64,000 nucleotides of DNA from the NCBI GenBank assembly GCA_002269645.1, contig NIVC01002635.1, forward strand, positions 62,001-126,000. Reading direction: 5' to 3'. Made by a program: the position numbers and the translations under genes. Below are positions 6,529 through 62,564 of this stretch, piece by piece. The notes beneath the pieces were generated by a model. That model was not told where the DNA came from. It saw only the letters and a list, made by a program, of their open reading frames with translations, and did not search any database. Each line of letters begins with the position of its first letter. Position 1 is the first letter of the stretch. The DNA comes from Macrostomum lignano. Lineage: Eukaryota.

Positions 6529-7070
6529 GACTCCGATGTCTACTGCTTGTGGTCCACCGTATTCTATGGAAACAGCTCTACCTATAGCCTTAGCAAATCT
6601 TCTCAGAAGTTTAAACAGGTAAATCTGAGACAATGGTTTTCCAGCAGGTACCAAGAGGAAGCAGACTTAATTGGGAATGTAAAAAGATTATCAAAATGCA
6701 GCTACTCGTATGACTGGCGCTACCCTCCTTGGCTCAGCTTATTTTGCCACTGTTCGAGTTCCTCCCGGTTTAAATGTGCATTCAAAGTTCCCTTTTCGAG
6801 ACGCTCAGAGACCCCACCAGTAGAGCAAAAATGACTGTTCATTTAGTTCCGTGTTTCGGTTTGGACTGAAAATGCTTGAGAGAATTGAGCAGCCAGTAGA
6901 CAGCTTTCCAGGAAAGCTAACAAGTAGGAACAACTGCAGAGTTCCTATGCGTCTTTGTTTCTGTTGGACTCTGACTGACTGATCATTTATGGACTGTGGG
7001 CTCTGGGTCAGTGTTTGGGGTGGGTTTTGTCTGGTGAGGGTTTGCGTACTCTGTGTACATCGTTGCTCTT

Positions 7071-7271
7071 TCTCCATTTTCACCTGCTTACCGTTGATCT
7101 TCACAAAACAGAAGTCAGCTGGCTTAGTTGATGCTCCGATGTTCTGAGCTGCCGATGTTGGTGTCGTGAAGTCGTTGACTAGTTGCAGCTGCTGAACAAA
7201 CTCAGTGATCTGATCTACAGTCAGCTCTTGCGTCATCTCACGCTCCAGAACCTTGTTTCTCGTGTCGTGGC
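7071..7271 (-). pseudogene. Inverted gag-end/protease-start fragment inside the Gypsy element
   Basis: Minus strand reads DTTRNKVLEREMTQELTVDQITEFVQQL...FCFVKINGKQVKME, gag helices followed by the protease lead-in, opposite to the pol orientation. Confidence 0.65.
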
Positions 7272-9089
7272 TTGCGTGAGGCCAATGTTAAAATTAACGA
7301 GTCAAAGTGCGTTATGGAGGCTAGCATCCTGAAGTTTCTGGGGCACGTCATCGATTCTGAAGGCATCAAACCAGACCCAGGAATGGTTGAGAGAGTGCTA
7401 CAGGTAGCGAGCCCCAAGAGTAAAAAGGACCTAGAGAAGTTTCTAGGACTCGCACAGTTCTACGGCCGACTGATTCCCAACTTCTCCGAGCGCTGCCGAG
7501 TATTGCATGAGCTGAGGAGGAGCGACAGTGCATTCGATTGGAGCCCGGCAGCCGAGGCTGCCTTTGCCGAAGTAAAAGCATGTCTTGCCTCCGAGCCGTG
7601 TGTCAAGCCATACGACATCAATGCGCCAGTCTGCCTTCGTGTTGATGCTAGTGAAAAATCTGTAGGCGCTGTTCTGACTCAAGCAGGTCACCCGGTGATG
7701 TACCTATCGAGGATGCTCACCTCCGCGGAGTCCAACTACTCTAACATTGAAAGGGAGCGCTAGCCGTAGTTTGGGCAGTTGAGCGAGCGAAGAAAATGTT
7801 GATCGGGAAAAAAATTATCTTGCAAACGGACCATGAGCCTCTGAGATTTATTTTCAACCCGAGCAAAAGCCTGTCAAAAACAGCATCAGCTAGGCTGACT
7901 AGATGGGCCTTGAGACTGTGTGCATTCGATTACTCTGTGAAATACATTCCAGGAAAGCAGCTACTGGACGCTGATGCCTTGTCAAGGCTCAACTACACTG
8001 CAGAAGTCGACGAGGACACGGTGCATCAAGCGGATTCAGTGCTGAGCGCAGATGACTGCGGCGCGTCTGGGCTGGTGACTCGGCAGGAGCTCCGGGAAGC
8101 TACCCTGAACTGCTCGGTGCTGAAGAGACTGCAACAGAGAATCCGAACCGGGCGTTGGGGTCAGGTTTCCCAGGTTGAGCGACCCTTTAAAGCCTGTAGA
8201 ACTTCCCTGTCGACTGATAACGGCTTGGTGATCCATGGAACTCGAGTGGTACCTCCAGCAGTGCTTCGTCGGCGGATTCTGGAAGCGGCTCATGATGAAG
8301 TGCATCCTAGCTTTGAAAACACTAAGGCCCACATCTGCAAGGAATTCTGGTGGCCTGGATTGGATCGAGATGTGCGACAGTATGTGGAGAGATGCCGGAC
8401 ATGCGCTGAGTCCCGCCCACTGTCTAATCGCAAAATCGACATTTGGCCACCGGAGACAACTCCATGGAACCTCGTCCACATGGACCACTGCGAAGTCTCG
8501 GGAGTCGGCCTGCTGCTGCTACTGTCGGACGCTTACTCAGGCTGGCCTGAAGCCATTCCTGTTCCGGACAAGTCGACGGACACTGTCGAGAGTCCTGAGA
8601 GCTGTCTTTGCTCGCAACGGTGTGCCGCAAACCTTGGTATCCGACAACGCACCAGAGTTTAAATCGACCCGACTGTCTCAGTGGCTGAACTCAATCGGCT
8701 GCAGGGAGGTCCACACTCCGCCATACCACCCGGCATCAAACGGACAGGCTGAACGGCTCGTAAGGAGCCTGTAGGACGGCCTGAGAACCTGGAACCGAGT
8801 TGTCCCATTTCAACAATTCCTGCAGAAGCTGCTCCTGACCGTGAGGACTGGCCGGCCGAGTGGATCTAGACCAGCGTCACCGGACATCATGATGCGGGGG
8901 AGGAGGCTGCGTCATCCTCTATCAATGCCTGAACAAGTCGGAGATGCTATCTAGCTTCGGATGCGCCCAGAGACCGGACCCGTCAAGGCTAAGTTCGTGG
9001 TTCAGCATGGCCAAAATACTGCTCTGGTGACGCCAACTGATTTGCCGTCTGGAGGACTGCGTCTGGCCCACCGCAACCAATGGAGCGAC
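7272..9089 (+). pseudogene. Disrupted pol (RT C-terminus, RNase H, integrase)
   Basis: Frameshift near 7757-7763 (ERE/ALAVVWAVE), frameshift near 8585 and premature TAG at 8772-8774; conserved motifs are spread over ORFs 7272-7763, 7796-8662 and 8235-8774. Confidence 0.9.
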
Positions 9090-9302
9090 TGTTGGTTCTT
9101 GAGGCACAGACACTATAACACCAATTTTGATGTAGCCTATAGCTAACTCGGTAATTTCTTAAGTGCTCCAGTTGAGCAGCTCTTACTATCACTTTTATTT
9201 ATTGTGGCCTTAGAACGAGGCACCGCTCATTCAAGTTGTACTGTAATGCTAGTGGCGGTCATGCCATAGATAAAAGCCTATATCAAATTAAGACATCTAA
9301 CA
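9090..9302 (-). mobile_element. Solo LTR (213 bp) nested in the Gypsy element
   Basis: Begins TGTTGG and ends CTAACA, flanked by 5-bp TSD GCGAC (9085-9089, 9303-9307). AATAAA on the minus strand. Unrelated to the host LTR. Confidence 0.8.
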
Positions 9303-10754
9303 GCGACCGTCCAGAGCGACCGTCCAGAGCCTGAGCATCTGCAGCCCCCAGCTGGTACGCCCAAGATGGTCGTTCCGGAACCAGCTGACAAGCCGACGGT
9401 TCAGAATGACAGCGCGAATACTGGTGGGCCTTCCTATGAGCTCCAACCAAGACGTCCGGTCTGCTACAAGTGCTAATTTGATGGGGGGGGGGGGGTAGTG
9501 TTGGACTCTGACTGACTGATCATTTATGAACTTTGGGCTCTGGGGTCAGTGTTTGGGGTGGGTTTTGTCTGGCGAGGGTTTGCGTACTCTGTGTACATCG
9601 TTGCTCGTTCTCCATTCCCTCGTGCATGTCTTATCTCTGTCACCCATCCCAAAGCTATGCTGCGATGCTTATTAAATGTGTTCTGATCTAAGGTATACTT
9701 CAATAAACTTTTGTCACTACTGAGTGCTAAAGCTATTGACTTTCAGTTTCTAAATTCGCAAGTTTGGGACTGAATTTCCTATGCTTTTCGGTTGTTCAGG
9801 GACTGCTGAATTCGTCCTTGAGCTATTTGGCTGCAATTTGTAAGCAGCCAATTCGAAATTTCAGATTCAAATTTTCAGCTAGCTTAAAGTTTCCGACAAT
9901 AAAAGGCTAAAAAACAGATTATTTTTCACAATATGAAAGTTCGATACTGATTCGTTCTAGCACTACTTACAGTAGGCTTTCAAAAACACCAACCTGAGCT
10001 GCCTGAATGGCTACCGCTATTATTATTATCAACAGTGCGCTGGATTTTTAGTAGAATATTCGGGTACAGAGAATATTGAAAAAAAATTACAGGAGGAGCT
10101 GTCCTGTGGCTGTGAATTGCAGTTAAAATTTCATGCACAGGCCCAGATATACGAGCTACATGGAAGTTTTGTGCGCACTGGCAGGAGTATATTAATCAGT
10201 GACCCAATGGTTCAGTTTTAATGTCATTTTATTTATTGTTATGAAATGTGTTGCATTATTGCTAACACTTGAACTCGAATGAGCACAGCAAGCAGCTTCA
10301 GGCGGTACTCGAAGGACTCAGCGAAAAGAGGAGGCTGACAGTGCTCCAGGAAAAATGCCAGGCCGAGTTCCTGGGCCTTACGGGATTTGAGCTGATAGAG
10401 TTCGACCGTCAAAGAGGTGACCCGCATCCCAGCACAATGGAAATTAATGCGTCATTTCATCCCCGACTTTGCAAAGACAGCGAGACCACTGCGAGAGGTG
10501 CTCAAGTAGGACACCGCCTTTCACTGGACGAGCGAGTGCGACTCTGCCTTCGCCGAGCTCAAGCGACAGCTGAGCTATCTACCGGTGGCGGTAGGCCTGC
10601 ATCTACCGATACACCTAGGCTTTGCAGGGCTTTGGGAGTTTGTTAAATCATGCCAGTTATCTTTCAACTATAAATGCATGTGCGCTCCAGCCTTCCTCTG
10701 TGACTTTTCTACCCCGCAATCGCTTCTCGCATCTGCGTTAATTGGCTCGCAGTA

Positions 10755-10809
10755 GTACAACATGGCTGTACAACATGGCTGTACAACATGGCTGTACAAC
10801 ATGGCTGTA
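10755..10809. repeat. 13-bp tandem repeat GTACAACATGGCT x4
   Basis: Direct observation. Confidence 0.9.
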
Positions 10810-11529
10810 GCCAGGGAAGTTCCGCTTCTCTATGTCCATATCTATGAACATGTTCTCAGAATGCTCACTTTTACATTTAGACAAGAGACAACAAGAAAGA
10901 CCCAACGAGACTACTGTTAACAGAGTGAGCAGCAAGCGTTTATCAAACGAATTTTATTAGTGTGTGAAAATCACGCAAACTTTCCGTTCAGGCACTGCAA
11001 CGGCAGTAAAAGCACTGCAGTTCTGCAGCACTACTGAGATCGCTATGATAGCCACCTAGCCATAGTCAGCTGGATGCTTCTAGAGCTTCCGGCCTCTGCT
11101 GCATATTGGCAAAGCGTTTCATGATTTGTTATTGTTAAACTGGCAAGAATAGATTTCGAAAGTGAAAATTTACGGAATTATCAAGAGTAGTGTTTTGAAT
11201 TTTAGCAAAGTTATTATAAAATTACAATCACAAGTATCAAAAGTAGTCAGGTTTGTATTAGAATATAAATACAGAATTATGATTTACTGGAAAATTATTG
11301 GTTATCGTACGATCGCCAGCATGCAAATCAACCGATAATTCGATGTCCTCTCTCCGACATAGATTCTCTTATCAGACCTCCCCCCAAATTGTATTTCCGC
11401 TATTTGTATTTGCGGGGCAACACAAGGTTAGTAGATACAAAACTGAATAAAGTTTGTCACAATTGGGCACAGCTCAAAGCTCCGATGCGATTTTCCGAAT
11501 GGAAGCTTTCAATATAAAATGCCACTGCG

Positions 11530-14194
11530 CTACTGCTGTGTCTTCTTATTCCCTTTGTGCAGCAGCGAGGTGAGGTACAGGTTCAGCGCCAGGTCGCTGC
11601 CCGCAAGGTTCGCATTGAAGCTGCGCCTGCATTTGGGACACCTGGCCTCTAAAGTGTGTCCCGAGAACTCCGACACCAGAGACTCCTCACCGCACAGCGG
11701 GCACCTGTACATGCATGTCTGCAGACCCTTCAGTGAGGCGAACAGCTTTTCAGCGACGCCCGGTCCGCGCTCTCTGAAGGCGGCTCTCTCGGCCTCAGTC
11801 AGCTGCTCCTCGGTCCAGAACACATCGATGAACTTCATCCTGAGCACGGCTGCGCTCTGCACTCTGAAGAAGCCGCCGTCGCCCCAGCCGGAGCCCCACG
11901 AGTTCATCAGCCTCAGGCTGTGTCTGTCGAAGCTCATCAGCACCACCGCGTGTCCGAACAGCTCAGAGTCTCCCCGAGCTCCGAGTCCACCGGTGAGGTC
12001 GGACTGAGTGAGAATGCCTTCGGGATTCTGCTTGAAGAACTGCCTGAAGCTGCCCCACTCGCTCTTAGTGAGGTGGAACCTCGCCACGACTGGCCGCTTG
12101 GCGATGACGGCGTCCAGCGCGGCTCTCTCATCGACCTCCTTGCACTGCAGCCGGTACTCCGGGCACACTGTCCGCAGCACCTCGACTGTGCGGGCTCTGC
12201 GCTGTCCGAACTGAGTGACGATCTCGTCTCTGAGCTGGAAGAAGTCCGGATATCCGCCGTCCCGACCCACAACCCTGAGCATGCTCAGGTGCATGACGGT
12301 CGCCGACGCGACTGCATAGCAGGTGAGCTCCGACTGTCGCTGCGGCTCGAAGCCCTCGTTGGCCCTGTTGATGTACAGGTCGAGGTCCACGTCGGCCAGC
12401 ACGTCCGACAGCGCGTCCTGCGAGCACACGCAGCTCTTGGCGATGTCGCAGACCTCATCGATGAGGTCGGGGTGATTGATCTGGAAGAACAGTCGGGTCT
12501 CATTGTTGTCGGTGTCGATTGTCCAGCCTTTTCGGATGAACAGGGTTCTGGGGACCTTCTGGGTGGAGACTGTCGAGGCCATGTGGAACATAAATTTAGC
12601 AGGTCGATCCCAGCCACTGTCGAGTGTGCTGTAGAGCCGTCGCGGGTCAGAGATGTCAGTGTCCGTGATGAAGCAGGACACGACCGTCACCCCGAGATTG
12701 TGCAGTTTCTGTCGCATCTCAGTGTCTCGGCTGCCGCTGCTGTCCGCCGGCTCTCCATCAGAAAGGATGAAGAGCAGCTTGAACTCAGTTTTGCGTTTCT
12801 CGCTACAAAAAATATTTTTCGATGTCTCGAGAGCCTCCATCAGCGGGGTGCCTCCGTAGATGAAGGGCTCGATGGTGTCCAGGAGCTCCGTGATTCGCTC
12901 GTCAGTCAGCTCAGCGTCTTCGTTGCAGGAGTGCAGGATTTTCTGAGCTTCATCTGGGGCAAAGACGGACAAAGGAGTCAACTGAGTCAAAGGACTCAAT
13001 GCCCTCAACTCATTCTCCGCTCTCCTTCTTTCAGCTTCTGCTTCTGCTTCTACTTCTGCTTTTACTTCTGTTTCTTTCTGCTTCTTTTTGGCGTTAAGGA
13101 AGTTTTCACATTTGTTCACAACAGCTCTAACTTCGGAGTCCGTCCCCAACAACGGGTCTTCTGACCCCACAAACGAACCAAGAAATCCAGAAGTGACTCT
13201 CGCGGCTTCGCTCGCCCAGTGAAAATTTCGGCACTGCTCAGGCAGATAATCATCAACAACTTTTCGTTTGAATTCCGAGTCGGTTTGCAGAGCGTCCAGA
13301 ATGACGCAGGCAGTTCGCTTGTCTCTTATATTCCTGTCCACCATGTCCGCTGTGGCCCAACTCCGAACTCTCGGCGCTCCACTGGACTCAAGGATGGAGA
13401 GAGCTCGGTCAATGATATCTTGCTTTGAAGAAGATTCTAACCTCTTTATTCGGTCTTCATACTCCTGCTTCTTTCTTCTGGCCTCATCTTCCAGCTCCTG
13501 TTTTTTCCTGTCCAGTTCTTGCTTTCCCCTCTCCAGCTCTTGCTTTTTACGGTCCAGCTCTGGTTTTCTCCTCTCCAGCTCTTCCCTTTTTCTCTGCCCA
13601 GCCTCCAGTGAGGCCAAGATGTCGAACACTGTGGGCTGTGACTCAGCTCCCACGCCGCCCAGGAACACCTGGTTGGTCGGTGACACGTCGTGCTCGACCA
13701 GCTGGTCGGCCACCTGGAAGATGGAGCGGACCCACTTGTTCTTCGATGCGTAGCTGGCCGCGCCCGCTGCCTGCTGGCAGTCGAAGCTGCGCTGCATGGA
13801 GCCGGAGACGTCCAGCAAAGCTCCGGTGAGCACCGACCTCACGTGACGCTCCTGCAGTGTCGGTGGAAAGTTCAGCTTGACATGCAAAACCTTTTAGCTA
13901 CAAATGTGTGTTTAAAATCTGTAGAACATGAAGTAGTGCTCATTTATGTGGTTCATTGTATAATGATATGATTTCAATTCATAAATTCTATAAAGGTGCA
14001 TCCTTTAATTCTATTTTAGCGTCTGATACATAAATAACTTTATTATAAAATATTTGTACTTAGTGAATTTAAGATATAGAAATTATGATAATGAAAAATA
14101 TCTTTCATTCTGTTCAAGAGAGGAAGAACAACCAGTTCATTCTGTTTAATTTTTTCTGAATTTCGGAAAGCAGAAACTTCGTGCAGCTTACCAT
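11530..14194 (-). CDS. Split-VWA / coiled-coil / papain-like (C1A) cysteine protease / Zn-ribbon protein, paralog 1 (~774 aa)
   Basis: Exon 1 coding = ATG 14194-14192; intron 14191-13852 (GTAAGC...CTGCAG); exon 2 13851-11530. MIDAS motifs LLDVSGSM, YGGTPL, FILSDGE. Protease QRQSELTCYA, GHAVVLM, MNSWGSGWGDGGFFRV. Zn ribbon CPLC-x17-CPKC. Confidence 0.85.
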
Positions 14195-14510
14195 TGAGAA
14201 TCCTTTCAATTTTTGGCTCAAGTTGTGGCTTTACTTAAGGAGAACTGGCAGCACTGACTGGAATAATTCAAATTATGTATAAATTCATTATCGCAACAGA
14301 TAGAAAACTGGAATCTTTAATAAAGGCCCAATAGTTTAGGTAAATGGAAAATATTTCTAATTTGCTTTAACAAATAGCATTCAAACGTTGATTTCCTTCC
14401 AGTGAAATTAACGTTTGTTTTATTTAGTTAAAATATCCGGAAAAATTATTTAGAATTTAAAACAGTATCATGCACTGGTTGTGCGAGATTGAGTGAGTGC
14501 TGACCGGGTG

Positions 14511-14790
14511 CGCCTTCACCTCTGCAATGCAGCATCACATCAATCACCTTCACCTCACTAATGCAGCATTGCATCACTCGCATTCACCTCACCAATGCAG
14601 CATCACATCATTCGCTTCCACCTCACTAATGCAGCATTGCATCACTCGCCTTCACCTCACTAATGCAGCATTGCATCACTGCCTTCACCTCACTAATGCA
14701 GCATTGCATCACTGCCTTCACCTCACTAATGCAGCATTGCATCATTCGCCTTCACCTCACTAATGCAGCATTGCATCATTCGCCTTCACC
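14511..14790. repeat. 34-bp minisatellite (CACTAATGCAGCATTGCATCACTCGCCTTCACCT), about 8 degenerate copies
   Basis: Direct observation; the same repeat lies upstream of paralogs 2 and 3. Confidence 0.9.
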
Positions 14791-15929
14791 GCCTTGAAAA
14801 TTGCATTTGATAAAGCTTCTGTTAAGCTTTTAGATTTTTGCGCTTTGATAAACAATTCTGTATGTACATTCGAGTTTTTAGGTCTGGAGTCTTCTTGATA
14901 GCCGATAAAGTTCAGCTTATAATTTCAGGTTTTAATACCGAAATAAATCAAAGCAAGTCTTTTTTGCAGCGCTGTGCTCGGGTGCACTGATGAGCAACCT
15001 CCGGCTCTCAGTCAAGGGTGCCAGGCACTGCACTGCAACACGTTTCTTTCTCTCTGCGCCCCCTAAGCTGCTAACTTGATTGTGCCCCACCCCATTTTCT
15101 CTGCCCTTCTAAGTTGTTTACACACAAGACCTGCGACCGCCCCACTCCCCCACCCCCATTCTGCTGTGATTGGCTGACCGGCCCCCAGCTGTCAACACCC
15201 AGCTGCCTGTGCTCTCTTCTGCCTTCTCATTGGCTGCTGGTTTTCGTGTAATTTTGGACCTTGTTTGAGCTCGTGGGTCTTCAGACCCTGGGGCTAAAAG
15301 TCAATGAACCCAAATATAAGATGTGTGGGCAGCCGGCAGGGCATGTGCCTGCTGATTGTGGGTAATTGCGCGTGTCTGCTCGTTTGCTTCGAGGGTGACC
15401 CTGCATATTGTACGGGACAGTCATAGGGACGGGCTGACCACGTCTCTCGAAGTCATAGAGACGAACGATCAGATTCCGAAGTTAGTCTAGCCAGGGCGAC
15501 TGACTCCATCAAGTGCTCACTGCTCTGAATTTCTTGGGAATAACTGGGAAGCACACGATCGGTTTAACGGCCGCGTCACAACACCAGCAAACTGCGTTTT
15601 CCCAGTAGAAGATACCCGTCAGAAATTGTATTGCGCTTCCGCTGCTACTGATGGTCTTTGCAACATCTGAAACGTCCGAAATGCATAGAGAAATACGTCA
15701 GGGGCCCTGTCTCCGTTTTACCATGTTTTCATTCCACAACAAAATCCAAAAATCTAAATGATAAAAGCAGATAGTATACTTTGTTCCTCACAAAAATGGA
15801 AGGCCGGTAAAGTAGGAATACATTGTCGAAATCTGTACTTTTCTTTTCTTATTTTTTCTTTTTCTTTTCTGAAGAAAAAGAATTTTCTTTAAATCCAGTG
15901 AATGTTTGATTGTCTCTCGGATACTGGAA

Positions 15930-16195
15930 AGTGCTAGTCAGTGCCAGTCAGTGCCAGTCAGTGCCAGTCAGTGTCAGTCAGTGCCAGTCAGAGCCAGTTA
16001 GAGCCAGTCAGTGCCAGTCAGAGCCCGTTAGAGCCAGTCAGTGCCAGTCAGTGCCAGTCAGAGCCAGTCAGTGTCAGTCAGAGCCAGTCAGTGCCAGTTA
16101 GAGCCAGTCAGTGCCAGTCAGAGCCCGTTAGAGCCAGTCAGTGTCAGTCAGAGCCAGTCAGAGCCAGTCAGAGCCAGTCAGTGCCAGTCAGTGCT
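15930..16195. repeat. 10-bp tandem repeat AGTGCCAGTC/AGAGCCAGTC
   Basis: Direct observation. Confidence 0.95.
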
Positions 16196-16582
16196 AATTG
16201 ATAGACTTGGGACACAACACACTGTGATTCGCACGAAAAACTGCAAAAATTACTACTTACAATACAAAAGCGCGATTCTTCTCGGCTTCAGGTACTGAGA
16301 AATAAGCAAAAGAAATACTCTCGTAGATATAAATTTATTTCAGCAAGCCAAAATTGATAAGTTTACAAAAAGAGAAATCCGAAGATATTGAAAATTCTCC
16401 AAATCTGTCAACAAGCAGCCAGCATCTTGCTGCTATTAAAAGATCGCAGTTTATGATCGATATGTGAAAGAGCGAGCAGGTGATGTGCAGGTTCCCATTT
16501 AAGACGCCCAGCCCCCAAGCGTGCGTCCTGAAGGCTCCGACGCGATAGACTGACTCAGTAAGACTGGCAACCTTACTTCCAA

Positions 16583-16740
16583 CTCTGCGGACCCTTCAGC
16601 GAGACGACCAGTCAGTCTCTCAGCGCCCTGTGAACGCGGCTCTGTCGGCCTCAGTCAGCCGCTCCAGAACACATGAATGGAACAAATCCAGGCCGGTACT
16701 CCGGACACTTCCTTCAGCACATTGACTGCCTGAGCTGCAG
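16583..16740 (-). pseudogene. Collapsed relic of a VWA-protease paralog (protease-domain pieces)
   Basis: Pieces match the intact genes: AQAVNVLKEV..PEYR vs ARTVEVLRTVCPEYR, LTEADRAAF vs LTEAERAAF, SLKGPQS vs SLKGLQT, with internal deletions and frameshifts. Confidence 0.75.
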
Positions 16741-16747
16741 ACAGCTA

Positions 16748-17238
16748 GACAGCTGATTATCGCATTGGGAACAGAAGCAGCTGGGAGACAAGGACAGCTG
16801 ATTATCGCATTGGGAACAGAAGCAGCTGGGAGACAAGGACAGCTGATTATCGCATTGGGAAGAGAAGCAGCTGGGAGACAAGGACAGCTGATTATCGCAT
16901 TGGGAACAGAAGCAGCTGGGAGACAAGGACAGCTGATTATCGCATTGGGAAGAGAAGCAGCTGGGAGACAAGGACAGCTGATTATCGCATTGGGAACAGA
17001 AGCAGCTGGGAGACAAGGACAGCTGATTATCACATCGGGAACAGAAGCAGCTGGGAGACAAGGACAGCTGATTATCGCATCGGGAACAGAAGCAGCTGGG
17101 AGACAAGGACAGCTGATTATCGCATCGGGAACAGAAGCAGCTGGGAGACAAGGACAGCTGATTATCGCATCGGGAACAGAAGCAGCTGGGAGACAAGGAC
17201 AGCTGATTATCGCATCGGGAACCGAAGCAGCTGGGAGA
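16748..17238. repeat. 45-bp minisatellite, about 11 copies
   Basis: Unit GACAGCTGATTATCGCATTGGGAACAGAAGCAGCTGGGAGACAAG. Confidence 0.95.
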
Positions 17239-18202
17239 GGAGAAGAGAGGAAGAGAAGAGAGTGACATGAAGATGGGAATACAAAGATCAATCAAAGGCA
17301 TATTTCAACGCTTCTGTTCTTTCACGGAAAAAACTGCAAAAAGTTTTAGACTAAGCCGTCTCAAACCAGTTTCATCTTCTCAAATCCCGAATCGCGCGTA
17401 AGTCGGTCTTGGCTGATGATGAGTAGCCATGGCGCGTTGCAGTTACCAGAGGCGCACAATTCAACCAAAGCGTACCTGTACAGTCTGTTACAGGTAGTTA
17501 CCAAGTACACAGACTGCCTAGAGGCTGCCAAGTTCAGTCTGAACTGGTTAAATTCTCTCCTTTCTAGCTGGATCATCGCAAGGGACTTGAGATGATTAAG
17601 AATTATCAATAATTATGTTAGTAACTACTGAGAGTAGCATGCCAGTCACCTTGCAGCTTCCTTTCTACTAGAATTGTTTAATTTTCATGGTCTCAGCTGC
17701 TCAGATCAGGTGAAAACGGCCTCTGTAACCGGTTTCTCTGGCAGTTGCGCACATCATTAACTGAACTTCCATTTTGGCAAAGAGACAAAAATAGAAATTA
17801 AATCTCTGTGAGCGGTTCGAGCACTGCATTGTGAGGCCAGACGTCTCTCCTCACAAACTGCTTGCTTTCTTATTTAACACTGCGGTGAACCCTTGAAATA
17901 CAAGGGCTGAGAGAACTCTTATTTATGACAGCCACTGACGCAACAAATAAAATATTGCAGTTTTGCCTCTGGGCAATTTGCAGATGATGCGCTTGAGACA
18001 AAAAGGCCTCAGTTTAAACTGAGCCAAGGCTGCGGCCCGCGCTCTCTCTGCGCTCGGTGGCGAGATGGTCAGAGATTTTTCAGCTCTTGCGTTCTCATTG
18101 GATTATGAGAACACAACTTCTGTGCGAGGTGCGGTTTCCAATGAACTGTCCCTGCATTTATTTTGCTCACTCTGTTTTTATCCTCTGTCTGCTATTAAAA
18201 GA

Positions 18203-21548: not shown

Positions 21549-24331
21549 CTACTGCCGTGTCTTCTTATCCCCTTTGTGCAGCAGCGAGGTGAGGTACAGG
21601 TTCAGCGCCAGGTCGCTGCCCGCAAGGTTCGCATCGAAGCTGCGCCTGCATTTGGGACACCTGGCCTTCAGCGTGTGTCCCGCGAACTCCGACACCAGAG
21701 ACTCCCTTTTGCAGAGCGGGCACCTGTACTTGCATGTCTGCAGACCCTTCAAGGACTTAAACAGTCTCTCAGCGACGCCCGGTCCGCGCTCTTTGAAGGC
21801 GGCTCTCTCGGCCTCGGTCAGCTGCTCCTCGGTCCAGAACACATCGATGAACTTCATCCTGAGCACGGCTGCGCTCTGCACTCTGAAGAAGCCGCCGTCG
21901 CCCCAGCCGGAGCCCCACGAGTTCATCAGCCTCAGGCTGTGTCTGTCGAAGCTCATCAGCACCACCGCGTGTCCGAGCAGCTCAGAGTCTCCCCGAGCTC
22001 CGAGTCCACCGGTGAGGTCGGCCTGAGTGAGAATGCCTTCGGGATTCTGCTTGAAGAACTGCATGAAGTTGTCCCTCTCGCTCTTAGTGAGGTGGAACCT
22101 CGCCACGACTGGCCGCTTGGCGATGACGGCGTCCAGCGCGGCTCTCTCATCGACCTCCTTGCACTGCAGCCGGTACTCCGGACACACTGTCCGCAGCACC
22201 TCGACTGTGCGGGCTCTGCACTGTCCGAACTGAGCGACGATCTCGTCTCTGAGCTGGAAGAAGTCCGGATATCCGCCGTCCCGACCCACAACCCTGAGCA
22301 TGCTCAGGTGCATGACGGTCGCCGACGCGACTGCATAGCAGGTGAGCTTCCACTGTCGCTGCGGCTCGAAGCCCTCGTTGGCCCTGTTGATGTACAGGTC
22401 GAGGTCCACGTCGGCCAGCACGTCCGACAGCGCGTCCTGCGAGCACACGCAGCTCTTGGCGATGTCGCAGACCTCATCGATGAGGTCGGGGTGATTGATT
22501 TGGAAGAACAGTCGGGTCTCATTGTTGTCGGTATCGATTTTCCAGCCTTTTCGGATGAACAGGGTTCTGGGGACCTTCTGGGTGGAGACTGTCGAGGCCA
22601 TGTCGAACATAAACTTTGCAGGTCGATCCCAGCCACTGTCGAGTGTGCTGTAGAGCCGTCGCGGGTCAGAGATGTCTGTGTCCGTGATGAAGCAGGACAC
22701 GACCGTCACCCCGAGATTGTGCAGCGCCTGTCGCATCTCAGTGTCTCGGCTGCCGCTGTTGTCCGACGGCGCTCCATCAGAAAGGATGAAGAGCAGCTTG
22801 AACTCAGTTTTGTGTTCCTCACTACAAAAAATATTTTTCGACGTCTCGAGAGCCTCCATCAGCGGGGTGCCTCCGTAGATGAATGGCTCGATGGTGTCGA
22901 TGAGCTCCGTGATTCGCTGGTCAGTCAGCTCAGAGTCTTCGTTGCAGGAGTGCAGGATTTTCTGAGCTTCATGAGGAGCAAAAACAGACGAATGAGTCAG
23001 TGCAATGAGATTTGCAGTGAGATTTTTCGTCAGTGCTCTGAGATCTTCAGCCAGTGCAGTGAGATTTGTACTCAATGGCCTCAGCTCATTCTCCGCTCTC
23101 CTTCTTTCTTCTTCTAATTTGTCGTTAAGGAAGTCTTCACATTTGCTCACAACAGCTCTTACTTCGGAGTCCGTCGCCTTTTTCGACTGTTCTTCAGCCG
23201 CGAACGCGGTCGTTGCTGCAGCCGCCCCCATCACAAGAGGGAGCAAACCCCCAGTCAGCAATCCACCGAGTACTCCAGCTCCGACCGCAGCGAATTTCGT
23301 GGCGGGACTGTGAGCGACTTCACTCGCGACGCGATAAGTTCGGCACTCTTCAGGCAGAAACTCATAAACAACTTTTCGTTTGAATTCCGAGTCGGTTTGC
23401 AGAGCGTCCAGAATGACGCAGGCAGTTCGCTTGTCTCTTATATTCCTGTCCACCATGTCCGCTGTGGCCCAACTCCGAACTCTCGGCGCTCCACTGGACT
23501 CAAGGATGGAGAGAGCTCGGTCAATGATATCTTGCTTTGAAGAAGATTCTAACCTCTTTATTCGGTCTTCATACTCCTGCTTCTTTCTTCTGGCCTCATC
23601 TTCCAGCTCCTGTTTTTTCCTGTCCAGTTCTTGCTTTCCCCTCTCCAGCTCTTGCTTTTTACGGTCCAGCTCTGGTTTTCTCCTCTCCAGCTCTTTCTGC
23701 CCAGCCTCCAGTGAGGCCAGGATGTCGAACACTGTGGGCTGTGACTCAGCTCCCACGCCGCCCAGGAACACCTGGTTGGTCGGTGACACGTCGTGCTCGA
23801 CCAGCTGGTCGGCCACCTGGAAGATGGAGCGGACCCACTTGTTCTTCGATGCGTAGCTGGCCGCGCCCGCTGCCTGCTGGCGGTCGAAGCTGCGCTGCAT
23901 GGAGCCGGACACGTCCAGCAGAGCTCCGGTGAGCACCGACCTCACGTGACGCTCCTGCAGTGTCGGTGGAAAGTTCAGCTTGACATGCAAAACCTTTTAG
24001 CTACAAAATGTGTGTTTAAAATCTGTAGAACATGAAGTAGTGCTCATTTATGTGGTTCATTGTATAATGATATGATTTCAATTCATAAATTCCATAAAGG
24101 TGCTTCTGAACCCATTAATTATTTCTTGTATTCTTGTACTTTTAATTCTATTTTAGCATCTGATACACAAATATCTTTATTATAAAATATTTGTTTTTAG
24201 TGAGTTTAAAATATAGAAATTATAAGAATGAAAACTATATTTCATTCTGTTCAAGAGAGGAAGAACAACCAGTTCATTCTGTTTAATTTTTTCTAAATTT
24301 CGGAAAGCAGAAACTTCGTGCAGCTTACCAT
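21549..24331 (-). CDS. Split-VWA / coiled-coil / C1A protease / Zn-ribbon protein, paralog 2 (~802 aa)
   Basis: ATG 24331-24329; intron 24328-23955; exon 2 23954-21549. Same motifs (QRQWKLTCYA, GHAVVLM, NSWG, CPLC...CPKC). The insert carries an extra hydrophobic Gly-rich segment. Confidence 0.85.
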
Positions 24332-53794: not shown

Positions 53795-56597
53795 TCACCA
53801 ATTCGCTGCACAAAGCTCTAGAAGCTCCACTGCACTACTGCTGTGTCTTCTTTGTGCAGCAGCTGCTGTCCCTTTGTGCAGCAGCGAGGTGAGGTACAGG
53901 TTCAGCGCCAGGTTGCTGCCCGCCAGGTTCGCATCGAAGCTGCCCAAACACCTGGGACACCTGGCCTCTAAAGTGTGTCCCAAGAACTCCGACACCAGAG
54001 ACTCCTCACCGCACAGCGGGCACCTGTACATGCATGTCTGCAGACCCTTCAGTGAGGCAAACAGCTTTTCAGCGACGCCCGGTCCGCGCTCTTTGAAGGC
54101 GGCTCTCTCGGCCTCAGTCAGCTGCTCCTCGGTCCAGAACACATCGATGAACTTCATCCTGAGCACGGCTGCGCTCTGCACTCTGAAGAAGCCGCCGTCG
54201 CCCCAGCCGGAGCCCCACGAGTTCATCAGCCTCAGGCTGTGTCTGTCGAAGCTCATCAGCACCACCGCGTGTCCGAGCAGCTCAGAGTCTCCCTGAGCTC
54301 CGAGTCCACCGGTGAGGTCGGCCTGAGTGAGAATGCCTTCGGGATTCTGCTTGAAGAACTGCTTGAAGCTTCCCCACTCGCTCTTAGTGAGGTAGAACCT
54401 CGCCACGACTGGCCGCTTGGCGATGACGGCGTCCAGCGCGGCTCTCTCATCGACCTCCTTGCACTGCAGCCGGTACTCCGGACACACTGTCCGCAGCACC
54501 TCGACTGTGCGGGCTCTGCGCTGTCCGAACTGAGCGACGATCTCGTCTCTGAGCTGGAAGAAGTCCGGATATCCGCCGTCCCGACCCACAACCCTGAGCA
54601 TGCTCAGGTGCATGGCGGTCGCCGACGCGACTGCATAGCAGGTGAGCTCCGACTGTCGCTGCGGCTCGAAGCCCTCGTTGGCCCTGTTGATGTACAGGTC
54701 GAGGTCCACGTCGGCCAGCACGTCCGACAGCGCGTCCTGCGAGCACACGCAGCTCTTGGCGATGTCGCAGACCTCATCGATGAGGTCGGGGTGATTGATC
54801 TGGAAGAACAGTCGGGTCTCATTGTTGTCGGTGTCGATTGTCCAACCCTTTCGGATAAACAGGGTTCTGGGAACCTTCTGGGTGGAGACTGTCGAGGCCA
54901 TGTGGAACATAAATTCAGCAGGTCGATCCCAGCCGCTGTCGATAGTGCTGTAGAGCCGTCGCGGGTCAGAGATGTCTGTGTCCGTGATGAAGCAGGACAC
55001 GACCGTCACCCCGAGGTTGTGCAGTTCCTGTCGCATCTCAGTGTCACTGCTGCCGCTGCTGTCCGCCGGCTCTCCATCAGAAAGGATGAAGAGCAGCTTG
55101 AACTCAGTTTTGTGTTCCTCGCTACAAAAAATATTTTTCGACTTTTCGAGAGCCTCCATCAGCGGGGTGCCTCCGTAGATGAAGGGCTCGATGGTGTCCA
55201 GGAGCTCCGTGATTCGCTGGTCAGTCAGCTCAGCGTCTTCGTTACAGGAGCGCAGGATTTTCTGAGCTTCATCTGGGGCAAAGACTGACAAAGGAGTCAG
55301 TGCAGTGAGATTTGCAGTGAGATTTTTCGTCAGTGCTCTGAGATGTTCAGCCAGTGCAGTGAGATTTCTACTCAATTGCCTCAGCTCATTCTCCGCTCTC
55401 ATACTTTCTGCCTCTTCTTGACGTCGAAATTTTGCTTTAAGGTAGTCTTCACATTTGTTCACAACATCTTTTAATTTAGATTCCGTCCAATACAATGGCT
55501 CCTTAGCATTGGACATATAACCATAATAAAATACAGAAGTGGATCTCGCGGCTTCACTCTTCACGCGATAAGTTCGGCACTCTTCAGGCAGAAAATCATT
55601 AACAACAATTTGTTTAAATTCAGAGTCGTTTTTCAGAGCGTCCAGAAACACGCAGGCTGTTTTTTTGTCTCTTATATTCCTGTCCACCATGTTCTTCGGC
55701 GCCCAAAGTCGAACTCTCGGTGCGCCACTGGACTCAAGGATGGAGAGAGCTCGGTTAATGATATATTGCTTTGAAGAAGATTCTAGCATTTCTGCGAGTA
55801 TTCGGTCTTCATACTCCTGCTTCTTTCTTCTGGCCTCATCTTCCAGCTCTTGCTTTCTGTTGTCCAGCTCTTGCTTTATCATCTCCAGCTCCTGCTTTTT
55901 GCTCTCCAGCTCTTCCCGTTTTCTCTGCCCAGCCTCCAGTGAGGCCAAGATGTCGAACACTTCAGGCTGTGACTCGGCTCCCACGCCGCCCAGGAACACC
56001 TGGTTGGTCGGTGACACGTCGTGCTCGACCAGCTGGTCGGCCACCTGGAAGATGGAGCGGACCCACTTGTTCTTCGATGCGTAGCTGGCCGCGCCCGCTG
56101 CCTGCTGGCAGTCGAAGCTGCGCTGCATGGAGCCGGAGACGTCCAGCAGAGCTCCGGTGAGCACCGACCTCACGTGACGCTCCTGCAGTAGCGGTGAAAA
56201 GTTCAGCTTTAAGCTACATACACTAAAAATTGCGGTTACATCAAGCTCAGCCTTAGATGCACAACTTTGTAGCTAAAATGTGTGTTCAGTATCTGAGATT
56301 GGTTTAGAATATGAAAAATTGATTCGCTCGTTGTATAACTATATGATTGCAATTCATAAACTCGAAAAAGGTGCTTCTGAACCCATTTCCTTTTTCTTAT
56401 AATGTTATATTTATTATCTCGTTTAAATATCTGACACAAATTATTTTTGTTGCAATATAAATACACTTAATGAATTTGGAATATATAGGAGTTATGATAA
56501 TGAAAAATAATTTATCCTTTTCCAGAGAGGAAGAACAGCGAGTGAATTCTGGACACAGCATTTTTTTGGAAAGCAGAAATTTCCAGCAGCTTACCAT
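53795..56597 (-). CDS. Split-VWA / coiled-coil / C1A protease / Zn-ribbon protein, paralog 3 (~796 aa)
   Basis: ATG 56597-56595; intron 56594-56183; exon 2 56182-53795. Catalytic and MIDAS motifs intact (CPLC...CPRC). The C-terminal tail is extended by a late frameshift. Confidence 0.85.
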
Positions 56598-61180: not shown

Positions 61181-61619
61181 AGCGAACTTTGACGCGGTTA
61201 GAGCGACGGATGATTACCCTGAAAGTCAAAAAGTTTGTAGATTGCTCGTTGTTTGTAGATTCCTTGTTAGCTCTCCGATCCTGCAGCCATGAACACCAGA
61301 TAAACCCAGGATACCAGATTTCACTACTCTCAATATTTGAACGCGAATATGCGAGCTTTATCGTGCTCATCTGATCTTAGTTCAAGATCATTTCAGCTAA
61401 ATACACGGTTTATTCAGAGGATGAGACCAAGTGGTGCAGAATCAGTGTCTTTGACAGCGATTTCTGATTATAAACTAAACTGGTACATGTAAAATTTTTA
61501 ACCTAAATAAAATCATTACCATTATAGCGAGTTTAAGTTTGAGAGGGCGCCTTGCTCTCTTCCTGGATGTACCCTGCACCCATTTCCCTTCCCTTCCCCT
61601 TTCCACTCGCCTTCGCCTT

Positions 61620-61690
61620 CGAAGCTGCAGTGCATGGAGCCGGACACGTCCAACAGAGCTCCGGTGAGCACCTACTTCGCGTGATGCTCT
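61620..61690 (-). pseudogene. 5' fragment of another VWA-protease paralog
   Basis: EHHAK*VLTGALLDVSGSMHCSF, near-identical at the DNA level to the start of exon 2 of the intact genes; truncated after ~70 bp. Confidence 0.85.
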
Positions 61691-61927
61691 ACTTAGAGTT
61701 CGATCTTTTCAATGACGTTTGAACAGATAGAAGTGTAAGTTAAAGCCTTTCATAGCTCGCATTCGATTGCCTACTCGCAAGTAGTATAAAAATGACTGCA
61801 TTTTAATTTCTTGTTGCTAAAATGCATTCGATTTTTATAAGAATTTCTTGTGCACGCTGCTAGTCATTAATTTCACCGTGTGGCCCACAAGACAGAAAAT
61901 AATTCGATGATTATTACTGGATAACTT

Positions 61928-62327
61928 TTATTCATTTAGTGCTTTTAAATGAGTAAATATTCCTCTACAAGCAGGTATCTGTTGTGTATCAGACAAACCC
62001 GGAGCCCAAAGGGCATTGCTAAGCAAGGTGGAACCTTCGTCAGGACAAAAAATTATTTCAATATATTTTTTCGAAATTATTTTCATTTTTCGAATTTCGG
62101 CTTGCATCTGCTCAGCCGACGCAAGGACGTCGAACACCTCTGGGTCATTTTGAGCTCCGACGCCAATCATAAAAATTCGGTCAGCCGGAGATACGTCGGT
62201 TCTCACCAGCTGGCGTCCAACTCGAAAGATGGACTTGGCCCATGTCTGCTTGGCTGCCTCCGTCACCTGCCGGAAGCTCCGCTTTGTCGAGTTGGACGCG
62301 TCCAGCACAGCTCCAATGAATACTAAC
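61928..62327 (-). pseudogene. Divergent, truncated N-terminal VWA half of the VWA-protease family
   Basis: VFIGAVLDASNSTKRSF...WAKSIFRVGRQLVRTDVSPADRIFMIGVGAQNDPEVFDVLAS aligns with VLTGALLDVSGSMQRSF...WVRSIFQVADQLVEHDVSPTNQVFLGGVGAESQPEVFDILAS. SKKYI...LWAP matches paralog 3. It stops before the second VWA half. Confidence 0.8.
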
Positions 62328-62564
62328 CTGTCCGGCTGCTTGAGATTGGAGAAGCACGAGCGTAAATGCCGATAATGTATTTACCCAGCTACGAGTAGCT
62401 ATCAGTGTAACTATCTAAAGTGCCAGCAGATCTTTGCGGCGCACCTCACTCCTAAGTATCTCAGTAAATACTCGCAACTTGCTGATGCAGCGAACCAATT
62501 ACTCATCTTGCTCATGATGCACAAGCATGATGATTAAGGATATGTTACACTGTCGGCTAAGACA

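What the first reader, a model, noticed from the sequence alone, without database searches (positions are those of the whole stretch)
12965..13255. Hypervariable segment inside the VWA insert while the protease is nearly invariant
Seen: between KRKVV/KQIVV and SVFAP the paralogs are barely alignable. Paralog 1 has HWASEAARVTSGFLGSFVGSEDPLLGT; paralog 2 (22985-23365) has a Gly-rich hydrophobic stretch; paralog 3 (55290-55610) has STSVFYYGYMSNAKEPLYWT. The second VWA half and the protease differ by few residues. Inference: a swappable specificity/sensor loop under diversifying selection, as in immune receptors.
Basis: partly seen in the sequence, partly recalled or inferred. Interest (0 to 1): 0.72.

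Follow-up and report, generated by a model that had tools for sequence, protein, structure and literature searches.

The report
Fast-evolving tip loop in flatworm VWA-protease genes
Three tandem copies of an uncharacterised flatworm gene (a metal-binding VWA domain fused to a papain-like protease) are kept almost identical by copying from one another, except for a greasy surface loop on a helical stalk that differs in every copy; whether that loop is an immune-style sensor is not shown.

Summary

(1) The protease is "invariant" because synonymous divergence there is also near zero (dS 0.012-0.016), while non-coding flanks differ by up to 20%. That points to inter-paralog gene conversion, not purifying selection.

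(2) The variable block has both dN and dS raised (dS 0.30-0.45, omega 0.7-1.0; core loop 1.3, not significant). It is an older, mosaic piece, and positive selection is not demonstrated.

(3) The block is composite. It holds a 28-55 aa flexible loop (AlphaFold pLDDT below 50) on a stalk-borne helical insert, plus coiled-coil segments encoded by 21-bp heptad repeats that change by unit indels.

(4) The loop is the most variable site in about 100 homologues, yet it is compositionally constrained: charge-poor and rich in Gly, aromatic and hydrophobic residues. Par2's membrane-hairpin-like version recurs independently in distant members.

The window is from Macrostomum lignano. The family (split VWA, papain fold, zinc ribbon) had no informative name in the databases or papers I could search.

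The parts
11530..13851 (-). par1, main coding exon (aa 13-785 of the listed ORF, stop included): split VWA, papain-like protease, zinc ribbon
   Evidence: ORF. It is 100% identical to aa 37-809 of the public Macrostomum lignano model A0A1I8I0H8, whose junction L|ERHV places the splice acceptor at 13852/13851.
14192..14194 (-). Candidate start codon at the end of a proximal 5' exon (TCAATG|GTAAGC); the donor GT is at 14190-14191
   Evidence: The motif is conserved upstream of all three paralogs and is in frame with the acceptor, giving MERHVRSV.... This is inferred; no RNA data were available.
17367..17375 (-). Alternative distal 5' exon end (ATG AAA CTG|GT) used by the public gene model for par1
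   Evidence: The par2 counterpart near 33940 lacks the donor, so which first exon is used is unresolved.
13795..13812 (-). MIDAS motif DVSGSM of the N-terminal half of the VWA domain
   Evidence: D26, V27, S28, S30 and M31 are invariant or nearly invariant in the alignments of 24 and 103 sequences.
13435..13620 (-). Stalk helix 1 (aa 90-151), a coiled coil encoded partly by a 21-bp tandem repeat (13490-13602)
   Evidence: AF2 helix H90-151 with block-mean pLDDT 81-92; TRF period 21. These columns are empty in nearly all homologues (occupancy 0.01-0.04).
13228..13425 (-). Conserved helical module of the insert (aa 155-220, ILExxGAPRVRxWA ... LPxxCR)
   Evidence: AF2 helices H155-220. The module is conserved family-wide and is duplicated in some homologues.
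13144..13227 (-). par1 hypervariable tip loop, NFHWASEAARVTSGFLGSFVGSEDPLLG (aa 221-248)
   Evidence: pLDDT is below 50 for aa 223-244. This is the family-wide peak of entropy and mismatch.
12970..13143 (-). Stalk helix 2 (aa 249-306), with a conserved start (TDSEVRAVVNKCE) followed by a repeat-encoded part; 6/12-bp array at 13030-13085
   Evidence: AF2 helix H250-295; TRF; alignment.
12478..12969 (-). C-terminal half of the VWA domain (GGTPL Thr, LLFILSDG Asp of the MIDAS)
   Evidence: (TRAP VWA, E = 5.8e-5).
11812..12375 (-). Papain-fold cysteine protease domain (approximate limits); Cys523 at 12319-12321, His646 at 11950-11952, Asn662 at 11902-11904
   Evidence: Foldseek against PDB: ervatamin and cathepsin K, probability 1.00, TM 0.53-0.54. 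His646 is invariant, and Cys523 and Asn662 are conserved in at least 90% of the 103 aligned sequences. Pfam PF00112 scores just below its cutoff.
11629..11703 (-). C-terminal zinc ribbon (CPLC ... CPKC)
   Evidence: Invariant C729, C732, C750 and C753; weak Zn_ribbon Pfam hits.
21549..23954 (-). par2, main coding exon
23175..23339 (-). par2 tip loop (55 aa) with 33 consecutive uncharged residues, FAAVGAGVLGGLLTGGLLPLVMGAAAATTAFAA
   Evidence: Kyte-Doolittle 19-residue maximum of 1.81, the highest in the protein. pLDDT is below 50 for aa 221-268.
22989..23174 (-). par2 stalk helix 2, with a 21-bp heptad repeat at 23013-23067 (NLTALAE DLRALTK NLTANL)
53795..56182 (-). par3, main coding exon (altered, longer C-terminal tail)
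55487..55573 (-). par3 tip loop, TYRVKSEAARSTSVFYYGYMSNAKEPLYW (7 aromatic residues)
55289..55486 (-). par3 stalk helix 2, with a 21-bp heptad repeat at 55313-55367
61522..62380 (-). Degenerate N-terminal VWA fragments of a fourth family member (one with DVSGSM, one with a decayed MIDAS, LDASNST)
   Evidence: tblastn at 39% identity; ORF translations.

Best explanation
The marked segment is the outer part of a roughly 290-aa helical insert that splits the VWA domain of a cytosolic VWA / papain-like protease / zinc-ribbon protein of Macrostomum lignano. The model predicts two long helices that must leave and re-enter the VWA core, forming a stalk. They carry a small conserved helical module and, after the motif LPxxCR, a flexible loop.

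(a) Most of the gene, above all the protease-coding half, is repeatedly homogenised among the tandem copies by gene conversion, so silent sites are identical there too. (b) The loop evolves at about the neutral rate for its exact sequence, under a constraint on composition only (few charges; much Gly, aromatic and aliphatic). It is not homogenised, so each copy keeps an old, different version. (c) The adjacent stalk helices are encoded by 21-bp (one heptad) tandem repeats and change by whole-unit indels that roughly preserve stalk length.

Inferred function: the loop is a greasy docking element at the far end of the stalk. In par2 it has become a 33-residue uncharged hairpin with a central Pro that could insert into a membrane, while par1 and par3 carry short aromatic/Gly versions. 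On this reading the copies share one VWA-protease 'engine' but differ in what, or where, they dock.

Shown: the anatomy, the mosaicism, the rates, and the compositional bias. Inferred: the stalk geometry, docking, and membrane insertion.
For: Gene conversion. Protease dS is 0.012-0.016 in all three pairs, against 20% divergence of the par2-par3 3' flank and the par1-par3 upstream region (p = 1.5e-9). Topology switches along the gene: 35 sites support 12|3 in columns 101-200, 20 support 13|2 in columns 751-800, 10 support 23|1 in columns 301-350, and support is mixed within the block.

Block rates. dS is 0.30-0.45 and dN 0.29-0.34. For par1-par2 the block's synonymous excess over the rest has p = 7e-7.

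Structure. AF2 models reach pLDDT 83.6-83.7 and pTM 0.73, with helices 90-148/151 and 250-295/274-323 and a loop at pLDDT below 50.

Repeats. There are 21-bp and 6/12-bp arrays in the helix-coding DNA. Helix-2 lengths are 58, 62 and 66 aa despite unrelated indels.

Family-wide hot spot. Loop entropy is 2.5-2.6 bits against 0.5-1.9 elsewhere. Among 217 pairs at 80-96% identity, the loop mismatch rate is 0.50-0.54 against 0.03-0.30 elsewhere. In four independent DNA pairs, loop dN is 0.18 against 0.029 and loop dS is 0.15 against 0.041.

Compositional constraint. Charged residues are 15.6% in the loop against 26.5% in the rest (lower in 99 of 103 sequences). Gly is 11.4% against 6.0%, and hydrophobic plus Gly is 58.5% against 48.3%. 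The motif E-[GA]-x-[YF]-[FWY]..G.[VI]P..G..LQ.W recurs.

Recurrent long hairpins with central Pro/Gly appear at the same site in at least four separate lineages.
Against: Only three copies from one genome were available. The alignment inside the block is uncertain, so dS there is rough. Omega near 1 fits equally well a mix of positively selected and constrained sites. No membrane, localisation, expression or activity data exist. The homologue sequences used for the composition test are not phylogenetically independent. The raised loop dS in other species rests on two of four pairs, one of which has indels.
Confidence: 0.6

Rival explanations
1. One reading: the loop is a ligand- or pathogen-recognition surface under recurrent diversifying selection. 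Divergent versions are maintained or shuffled among paralogs, as in immune receptors or restriction factors such as the MxA L4 loop. The VWA-protease part is the conserved effector.
For: The loop is the family-wide hot spot, with dN six times the rest. Loop omega is about 1.2-1.3, against 0.3 in the adjacent module (p = 0.03). Old loop lineages persist inside otherwise homogenised genes, here and in other species. The genes form tandem arrays, and the family is large (426 clusters at E <= 1e-30). The loop is predicted to be flexible, sits beside a long-helix stalk, and is aromatic-rich, like MxA L4 (PMC12047444).
Against: Omega is never significantly above 1 (p = 0.34-0.47). The compositional constraint and the repeated conversion to long uncharged hairpins fit generic hydrophobic docking better than specific recognition. 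Two of the four close pairs from other species have nearly identical loops. No link to infection or immunity was found in databases or papers.
Confidence: 0.25
2. The block is a functionless, disordered linker. Its variation is purely neutral drift plus slippage indels, and it stands out only because the rest is homogenised.
For: The loop has pLDDT below 50. Omega is about 1. Tandem-repeat-encoded helices carry unit indels. The long coiled coil is absent from nearly all homologues.
Against: Loop composition departs strongly from the rest of the protein and from what a hydrophilic linker would have. A recognisable motif and a near-constant length of about 28-33 aa persist across cnidarians, annelids and flatworms. 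The stalk helices have high model confidence (block-mean pLDDT 81-97) and keep matched lengths. Long hairpins recur at exactly this site.
Confidence: 0.13
3. The copies are decaying pseudogenes or assembly duplicates, and the variable block is simply damage.
For: No ATG lies at the position where homologues start. Degenerate fragments sit nearby. The region is extremely repeat-rich.
Against: Three intact ORFs of 785-813 codons persist despite dS up to 0.45 in places. Omega is 0.06-0.3 in the VWA and middle regions. All indels in the block are in frame. Splice signals supplying an ATG are conserved, and a public gene model uses the same acceptor. The copies have distinct flanks and a private LTR-element insertion.
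Confidence: 0.03

Closest known systems
Papain family (peptidase C1; cathepsins, ervatamin, bleomycin hydrolase)
   Same: The protease domain has the papain fold (Foldseek probability 1.00, TM 0.53-0.54). It carries the Gln/Cys/His/Asn set in the canonical motifs (Q518, TCYA, GHAVV, NSWG).
   Different: I saw no signal peptide or propeptide upstream: the VWA domain starts within about 15 residues of the N-terminus. The domain is fused behind a VWA domain and ahead of a zinc ribbon. Sequence similarity is so low that Pfam PF00112 stays just under its cutoff (17.3-19.6 against 20.7 bits).
VWA / integrin I-type domains with a MIDAS site
   Same: The DxSxS, Thr and Asp MIDAS residues are conserved. 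An alpha/beta pattern appears in the model. The profile matches the TRAP VWA domain.
   Different: In M. lignano the domain is split after its second strand by a roughly 290-aa helical insert (stalk, module, loop); most homologues have about 190 aa there. Pfam VWA models are sub-threshold for the window proteins.
MxA (dynamin-like antiviral GTPase) loop L4
   Same: This is an analogy of layout only. In both, a disordered, rapidly evolving loop rich in hydrophobic and aromatic residues projects from a helical stalk of an otherwise conserved enzyme (PMC12047444; bioRxiv 10.64898/2026.08.07.743570).
   Different: There is no homology. For MxA, positive selection and target binding are demonstrated; here omega is not above 1 and no target is known.
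Concerted evolution of tandem multigene families with an unconverted variable region
   Same: Near-zero dS in most of the gene against diverged flanks, switching tree topologies, and one block that keeps deep divergence.
   Different: Whether the block escapes conversion through selection, or because its indels and repeats stop conversion tracts, is unknown.
Monotopic hairpin membrane anchors and glycine-zipper segments (reticulon-, caveolin- or oleosin-type hairpins); comparison from general knowledge
   Same: Par2's loop has 33 uncharged residues rich in Gly, Ala and Leu, with a central Pro and charged flanks. Both ends must return to the same side because they belong to one folded domain.
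   Different: No Pfam glycine-zipper or hairpin family matched. Par1 and par3 lack the feature. Membrane insertion is untested.
CLCA proteins (protease plus VWA in one chain); comparison from general knowledge
   Same: A protease domain and a MIDAS-bearing VWA domain combined in one polypeptide.
   Different: CLCA proteins are secreted, use a metalloprotease, have the opposite domain order, and have no stalk insert. No sequence relationship was detected.

Membership tests
Peptidase C1 (papain family) | Catalytic Cys at the start of the central helix, with His and Asn in the beta-barrel lobe and an oxyanion-hole Gln upstream | tested here: met
   In the 103-sequence alignment, His646 is invariant and Cys523 (TCYA), Asn662 (NSWG) and Q518 are conserved in at least 90% of sequences. 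Distant mussel, tardigrade and fungal members mostly keep them.
Peptidase C1 (papain family) | Papain fold | tested here: met
   Foldseek of the AF2 model against PDB: ervatamin, papain and cathepsin K, probability 1.00, E = 3e-4, TM (target) 0.53-0.54. BFVD hits are Peptidase_C1 proteins.
Peptidase C1 (papain family) | Score above the Pfam PF00112 gathering threshold | tested here: not met
   17.3, 19.6 and 17.7 bits against a cutoff of 20.7. A few homologues carry a precomputed PF00112 hit. I treat this as a divergent relative of C1, not a canonical member.
Peptidase C1 (papain family) | Secretory signal and inhibitory N-terminal propeptide | tested here: not met
   Upstream of the protease lie the VWA domain and a conserved middle region. 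The N-terminus runs straight into the VWA MIDAS.
VWA domain | MIDAS residues DxSxS ... T ... D | tested here: met
   DVSGSM (aa 26-31), GGT347PL and LSD377G are invariant or nearly so.
VWA domain | Significant profile match | tested here: inconclusive
   The Pfam VWA_2 and VWA_3 models score 14-18 bits against a cutoff of 27 for the window proteins. The family profile hits TRAP VWA structures at E = 5.8e-5, and many homologues have precomputed PF00092 or PF13519 hits.
Immune-type hypervariable recognition region under diversifying selection | dN/dS significantly above 1 in the variable region | tested here: not met
   Omega is 0.69-0.98 for the block, 1.28 for the core loop (p = 0.47), and 1.21 in four pairs from other species (p = 0.34). 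Power is low: 35-118 codons.
Immune-type hypervariable recognition region under diversifying selection | Variable region with deeper coalescence than the homogenised remainder, inside tandem gene arrays | tested here: met
   Block dS is 0.30-0.45 against 0.012-0.016 in the protease. Loop dS is 0.15 against 0.041 in other species. Tandem copies occur here and in L009.
Immune-type hypervariable recognition region under diversifying selection | Response to, or binding of, a pathogen component | not testable with these tools
   No expression, interaction or phenotype data were available, and no literature was found.
Monotopic membrane hairpin | At least about 30 uncharged, hydrophobic residues with a central helix breaker and charged flanks, both ends on one side | tested here: met
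   Met for par2 only: 33 uncharged residues, KD19 of 1.81, central LLPLV, flanked by K and EE. Par1 and par3 have 11-12 uncharged residues and KD19 of 0.53 and -0.36, so they do not meet it.
Monotopic membrane hairpin | Actual membrane association | not testable with these tools
   This needs fractionation or imaging.

The most novel reading that the evidence does not exclude
An undescribed family spread through animals and fungi (426 clusters at E <= 1e-30) encodes cytosolic sensor-proteases. A stalk-mounted, rapidly diversifying hydrophobic loop would recognise a pathogen or damaged-membrane cue. The MIDAS-bearing VWA domain would transmit the signal and the papain-like domain would execute a proteolytic response. 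Tandem paralogs would keep a common effector through gene conversion while preserving a repertoire of different loops.
Probability: 0.12. Interest if true: 0.8.

Novelty: new variant of a known kind. Interest (0 to 1): 0.45.

Why it matters
It shows how a 'conserved enzyme, hypervariable loop' pattern can be misread. Here the conservation is produced by gene conversion, so it says nothing about selection. The loop evolves at roughly the neutral rate under a constraint on composition.

The analysis also brings out a large protein family with no informative name: a split VWA domain with a helical insert, a divergent papain-fold protease, and a zinc ribbon. It occurs in corals, hydrozoans, annelids, echinoderms, molluscs, tardigrades, flatworms and fungi. 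One loop is the fastest-changing site in every lineage examined and has repeatedly turned into a membrane-hairpin-like segment.

Macrostomum lignano is an established laboratory model (PMC8629357, PMC11641670). From general knowledge, not checked here, RNAi and transgenesis are available in it, which would make the localisation and loop-swap questions directly testable.

Tried and rejected
Frameshift origin of the divergent loops: rejected, because only same-frame translations are similar.

Pseudogenes without a start codon: rejected, on conserved splice signals and a public model that uses the same acceptor.

Par2's hairpin copied from the neighbouring hairpin-containing genes or from elsewhere in the window: no DNA or protein match beyond chance.

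Pfam glycine-zipper or other named families for the insert: none at E <= 1.

PDB sequence search: only weak VWA and cathepsin hits.

Viral structure library: domain-level Peptidase_C1 hits only.

DNA for NCBI-annotated coral paralogs (P0013, P0035, P0038): not on record. I used ENA-derived pairs instead.

Literature: searches on the architecture, on coral LOC identifiers, and on M. lignano found nothing about the family.

The first one returned no M. lignano paralogs even though a 100% identical public model exists, so a repeat was unlikely to add genomic copies.
Full report
WHAT IS THERE

The window is eukaryotic and very repeat-rich. It holds an LTR retroelement, a 17-kb satellite and many minisatellites.

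It comes from the flatworm Macrostomum lignano. Residues 13-785 of the first ORF are 100% identical to residues 37-809 of the public model A0A1I8I0H8.

Three paralogous ORFs lie on the minus strand: par1 at 11530-13887, par2 at 21549-23990, and par3 at 53795-56173. Degenerate N-terminal fragments of a fourth copy lie at 61522-62380.

The ORFs open with TTG or GTG and lack the ATG that homologues use. However, a splice acceptor (CTGCAG|GAGCGT, par1 13852/13851) is conserved in all three copies, and the public model uses it. Two candidate 5' exons end in or near an in-frame ATG followed by a GT donor. The proximal one is conserved in all three copies (par1 14192-14194). The distal one, at 17367-17375, is used by the public model but lacks its donor upstream of par2. 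I therefore treat the genes as intact two-exon genes; this is an inference without RNA data.

THE PROTEIN

Each copy encodes a VWA domain with a complete MIDAS site (DVSGSM ... GGTPL ... LSDG). A roughly 290-aa insert splits this domain. A conserved middle region follows, then a papain-fold protease (Q518, Cys523 in TCYA, His646 in GHAVV, Asn662 in NSWG), and finally a CPxC...CPxC zinc ribbon.

Pfam scores are all just below threshold. Other evidence supports the domain calls:
- The family profile hits TRAP VWA structures at E = 5.8e-5.
- The AlphaFold models have pLDDT 83.6 and 83.7, with pTM 0.73.
- The models match papain-family structures with Foldseek probability 1.00 and TM 0.53-0.54.
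- I found no signal peptide or propeptide.

In the models the insert consists of:
- a long helix (aa 90-148 in par2, 90-151 in par1);
- a compact helical module ending in LPxxCR;
- a loop of low confidence (pLDDT below 50: par1 223-244, par2 221-268);
- a second long helix (par1 250-295, par2 274-323) that leads back into the VWA fold.

Because both helices start and end at the VWA core, they must run antiparallel as a stalk, with the module and the loop at its far end.

CHECKING THE OBSERVATION

The quoted peptides and coordinates are correct. For par1 vs par2 the block differs at 26% of aligned nucleotides, against 3.6% elsewhere (p = 3e-27), and it also has several in-frame indels.

The block is not uniform. 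It contains:
- the loop proper (par1 13144-13227, par2 23175-23339, par3 55487-55573);
- a conserved helix start (TDSEVRAVVNKCE);
- a coiled-coil part encoded by tandem repeats. These are a 6/12-bp array in par1 (13030-13085) and 21-bp heptad units in par2 and par3. The first stalk helix also has 21-bp arrays in all three copies.

Helix-2 lengths stay at 58, 62 and 66 residues despite unrelated insertions and deletions, which suggests the stalk length is constrained. Cross-frame comparison excludes a frameshift origin.

WHY THE PROTEASE LOOKS INVARIANT

Region-wise Nei-Gojobori estimates give:
- Protease: dS of 0.012-0.016 in all three pairs, with dN of 0.017-0.025. That is 2 synonymous against 7-10 non-synonymous differences.
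- Non-coding DNA next to the genes: about 20% divergence between par3 and the other two, and 4-8% between par1 and par2.
- The deficit of silent differences in the protease relative to the flank is significant (p = 1.5e-9).

Support for the three possible groupings switches along the gene:
- columns 101-200: 35 of 35 informative sites group par1 with par2;
- columns 751-800: 20 of 25 group par1 with par3;
- columns 301-350: 10 of 17 group par2 with par3;
- inside the block: all three groupings are similarly supported.

This is the signature of repeated inter-paralog gene conversion. The invariance of the protease therefore reflects recent homogenisation, not unusually strong purifying selection.

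THE VARIABLE BLOCK

Both rates are raised in the block: dS is 0.30-0.45 and dN is 0.29-0.34, giving omega of 0.69-0.98. For the par1-par3 core loop (35 codons) dN is 0.54 and dS is 0.42, which is not above 1 (p = 0.47). It is, however, higher than in the adjacent module, where omega is 0.29 (p = 0.03).

For par1 and par2, which are otherwise a recent duplicate, the block's synonymous excess (p = 7e-7) means the block was not simply mutated faster. Either it was left out of the homogenisation, or it was replaced from another copy.

THE FAMILY

Homologues at 43-50% identity occur in corals, Hydractinia, the annelid Owenia and a sea cucumber. More distant ones occur in a mussel, a tardigrade and a fungus. 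All are called uncharacterised or carry only generic domain names, and most keep the MIDAS site, the catalytic residues and the zinc ribbon. The exhaustive search found 1,662 cluster representatives at E <= 0.001 and 426 at E <= 1e-30.

The long coiled coil is specific to the flatworm copies; occupancy of those columns is 0.01-0.04.

The loop after LPxxCR is the most variable and most indel-prone part of the protein everywhere:
- Entropy is 2.5-2.6 bits, against 0.5-1.9 elsewhere.
- Among 217 pairs that are 80-96% identical, the loop mismatch rate is 0.50-0.54, against 0.03-0.30 elsewhere.
- Coding DNA from four independent close pairs (L001-L008) gives loop dN of 0.18 against 0.029, loop dS of 0.15 against 0.041, and loop omega of 1.21, not significantly above 1 (p = 0.34).

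The raised loop dS comes from two of the four pairs. So the window's pattern, a deep loop inside a shallow gene, recurs in some other lineages.

THE LOOP IS NOT FREE TO BE ANYTHING

Across 103 sequences it is:
- poor in charged residues (15.6% against 26.5% in the rest; lower in 99 of 103);
- rich in Gly (11.4% against 6.0%);
- rich in aromatic and hydrophobic residues.

Most members share a loose motif, E-[GA]-x-[YF]-[FWY]..G.[VI]P..G..LQ.W, and a length of 28-33 aa. Par1 and par3 still fit this pattern.

Par2 instead carries 33 consecutive uncharged residues (FAAVGAGVLGGLLTGGLLPLVMGAAAATTAFAA). Its Kyte-Doolittle 19-residue mean is 1.81, the highest in the protein.

Similar Gly/Ala-rich stretches with a central Pro occur at the same site in separate branches of a neighbour-joining tree and in more distant members:
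- the clade containing P0003, P0007, P0048, P0050 and P0086;
- Owenia P0068;
- P0124;
- Montipora P0001.

Because both ends of the loop belong to one folded domain, such a segment can only be a hairpin, not a membrane-spanning pass.

INTERPRETATION

The best-supported account is evolutionary. Gene conversion homogenises the genes. A composition-constrained surface loop evolves at about the neutral rate and escapes homogenisation. Repeat-encoded stalk helices change by heptad-unit indels.

Functionally, I infer that the loop is a hydrophobic docking element at the end of the stalk, and that in par2 it is a membrane hairpin. On this view the paralogs share an effector but differ in where or to what they attach.

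Its layout resembles the MxA L4 loop (PMC12047444). But its key prediction, omega above 1, is not met with the data available, and its main supporting contrast turns out to be an effect of gene conversion.

A purely functionless linker is unlikely, given the compositional bias, the persistent motif and the recurrent hairpins.

LIMITS

- There are only three copies from one genome.
- Alignment within the block is uncertain.
- The omega tests use few codons.
- There is no expression or experimental data.
- Searches found no literature on this family.

Noticed in passing
window 5593-6525 (-) and 59762-61180 (+): Two paralogous genes (42% identical) flank the cluster. Each has an N-terminal helical region, a Gly/Ala-rich uncharged stretch of about 40 aa (for example GLALGAIGLAALGFFTGGLAWIAAAGCVVGAGVVA), and then a coiled coil; the second carries a 14-aa repeat, DDRIAQLETEGLEK. 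Neither has a Pfam match. The only database homologues are two hypothetical proteins of Macrostomum lignano at about 50% identity. The hydrophobic stretch resembles par2's loop in composition, but there is no detectable sequence relationship.
   Followed up: partly
window 24546-29624: A young Ty3/gypsy-type LTR retroelement is inserted upstream of par2, inside the duplicated unit shared with par1. Its 304-bp LTRs (24546-24849 and 29321-29624) are 99.7% identical. The gag-protease-RT-RNase H ORF is at 26003-29212 and the integrase ORF at 25097-25993, both on the minus strand.
   Followed up: partly
window 34863-52059: A tandem satellite of about 17 kb, with offsets in multiples of 69 bp and about 96% identity between copies, separates par2 from par3.
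   Followed up: no
window 4113-4683, 16748-17238 (also 32551-33806), 18714-19730 (also 52390-52751), 30633-31994, 56911-57688: There are several further minisatellite arrays, with self-match offsets of roughly 13, 45, 5-10, 20 and 34 bp. Some are shared between the duplicated units around par1, par2 and par3. They generate long spurious ORFs such as the 'GEERR' and 'LSSP' repeats.
   Followed up: no
window 61522-61671 (-) and 61928-62308 (-): Two short ORFs encode N-terminal VWA fragments of the same family. One has an intact DVSGSM. The other is more diverged (39% identity), with a decayed MIDAS (LDASNST). They are probably remnants of a fourth, older copy.
   Followed up: partly
public model A0A1I8I0H8 (P0123) compared with window 5593-17375: The public 3,511-aa M. 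lignano protein named 'ribonuclease H' appears to be a chimeric gene model. It joins par1 to the downstream hairpin/coiled-coil gene, and the name suggests that its remainder comes from retroelement ORFs, which I did not check.
   Followed up: partly
window 7796-8662 (+): A fragment of another retroelement, with RNase H and integrase H2C2 zinc-binding domains.
   Followed up: no
L009 (ENA contig ctg21023, a homologue's locus): In another species' assembly, two family members lie about 10 kb apart in the same orientation. They sit next to a Mutator-type transposase and a Pox_A32-type packaging ATPase gene, the latter being typical of Polinton/Maverick elements. Whether the family travels with mobile elements was not examined.
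   Followed up: no
homologues P0003, P0007, P0028, P0048 and P0004, P0005 (alignment A3): In some homologues the conserved helical module of the insert (ILExNGAPRVRxWA ... LPxxCR) is duplicated in tandem. The insert therefore grows by module duplication as well as by coiled-coil extension.
   Followed up: no
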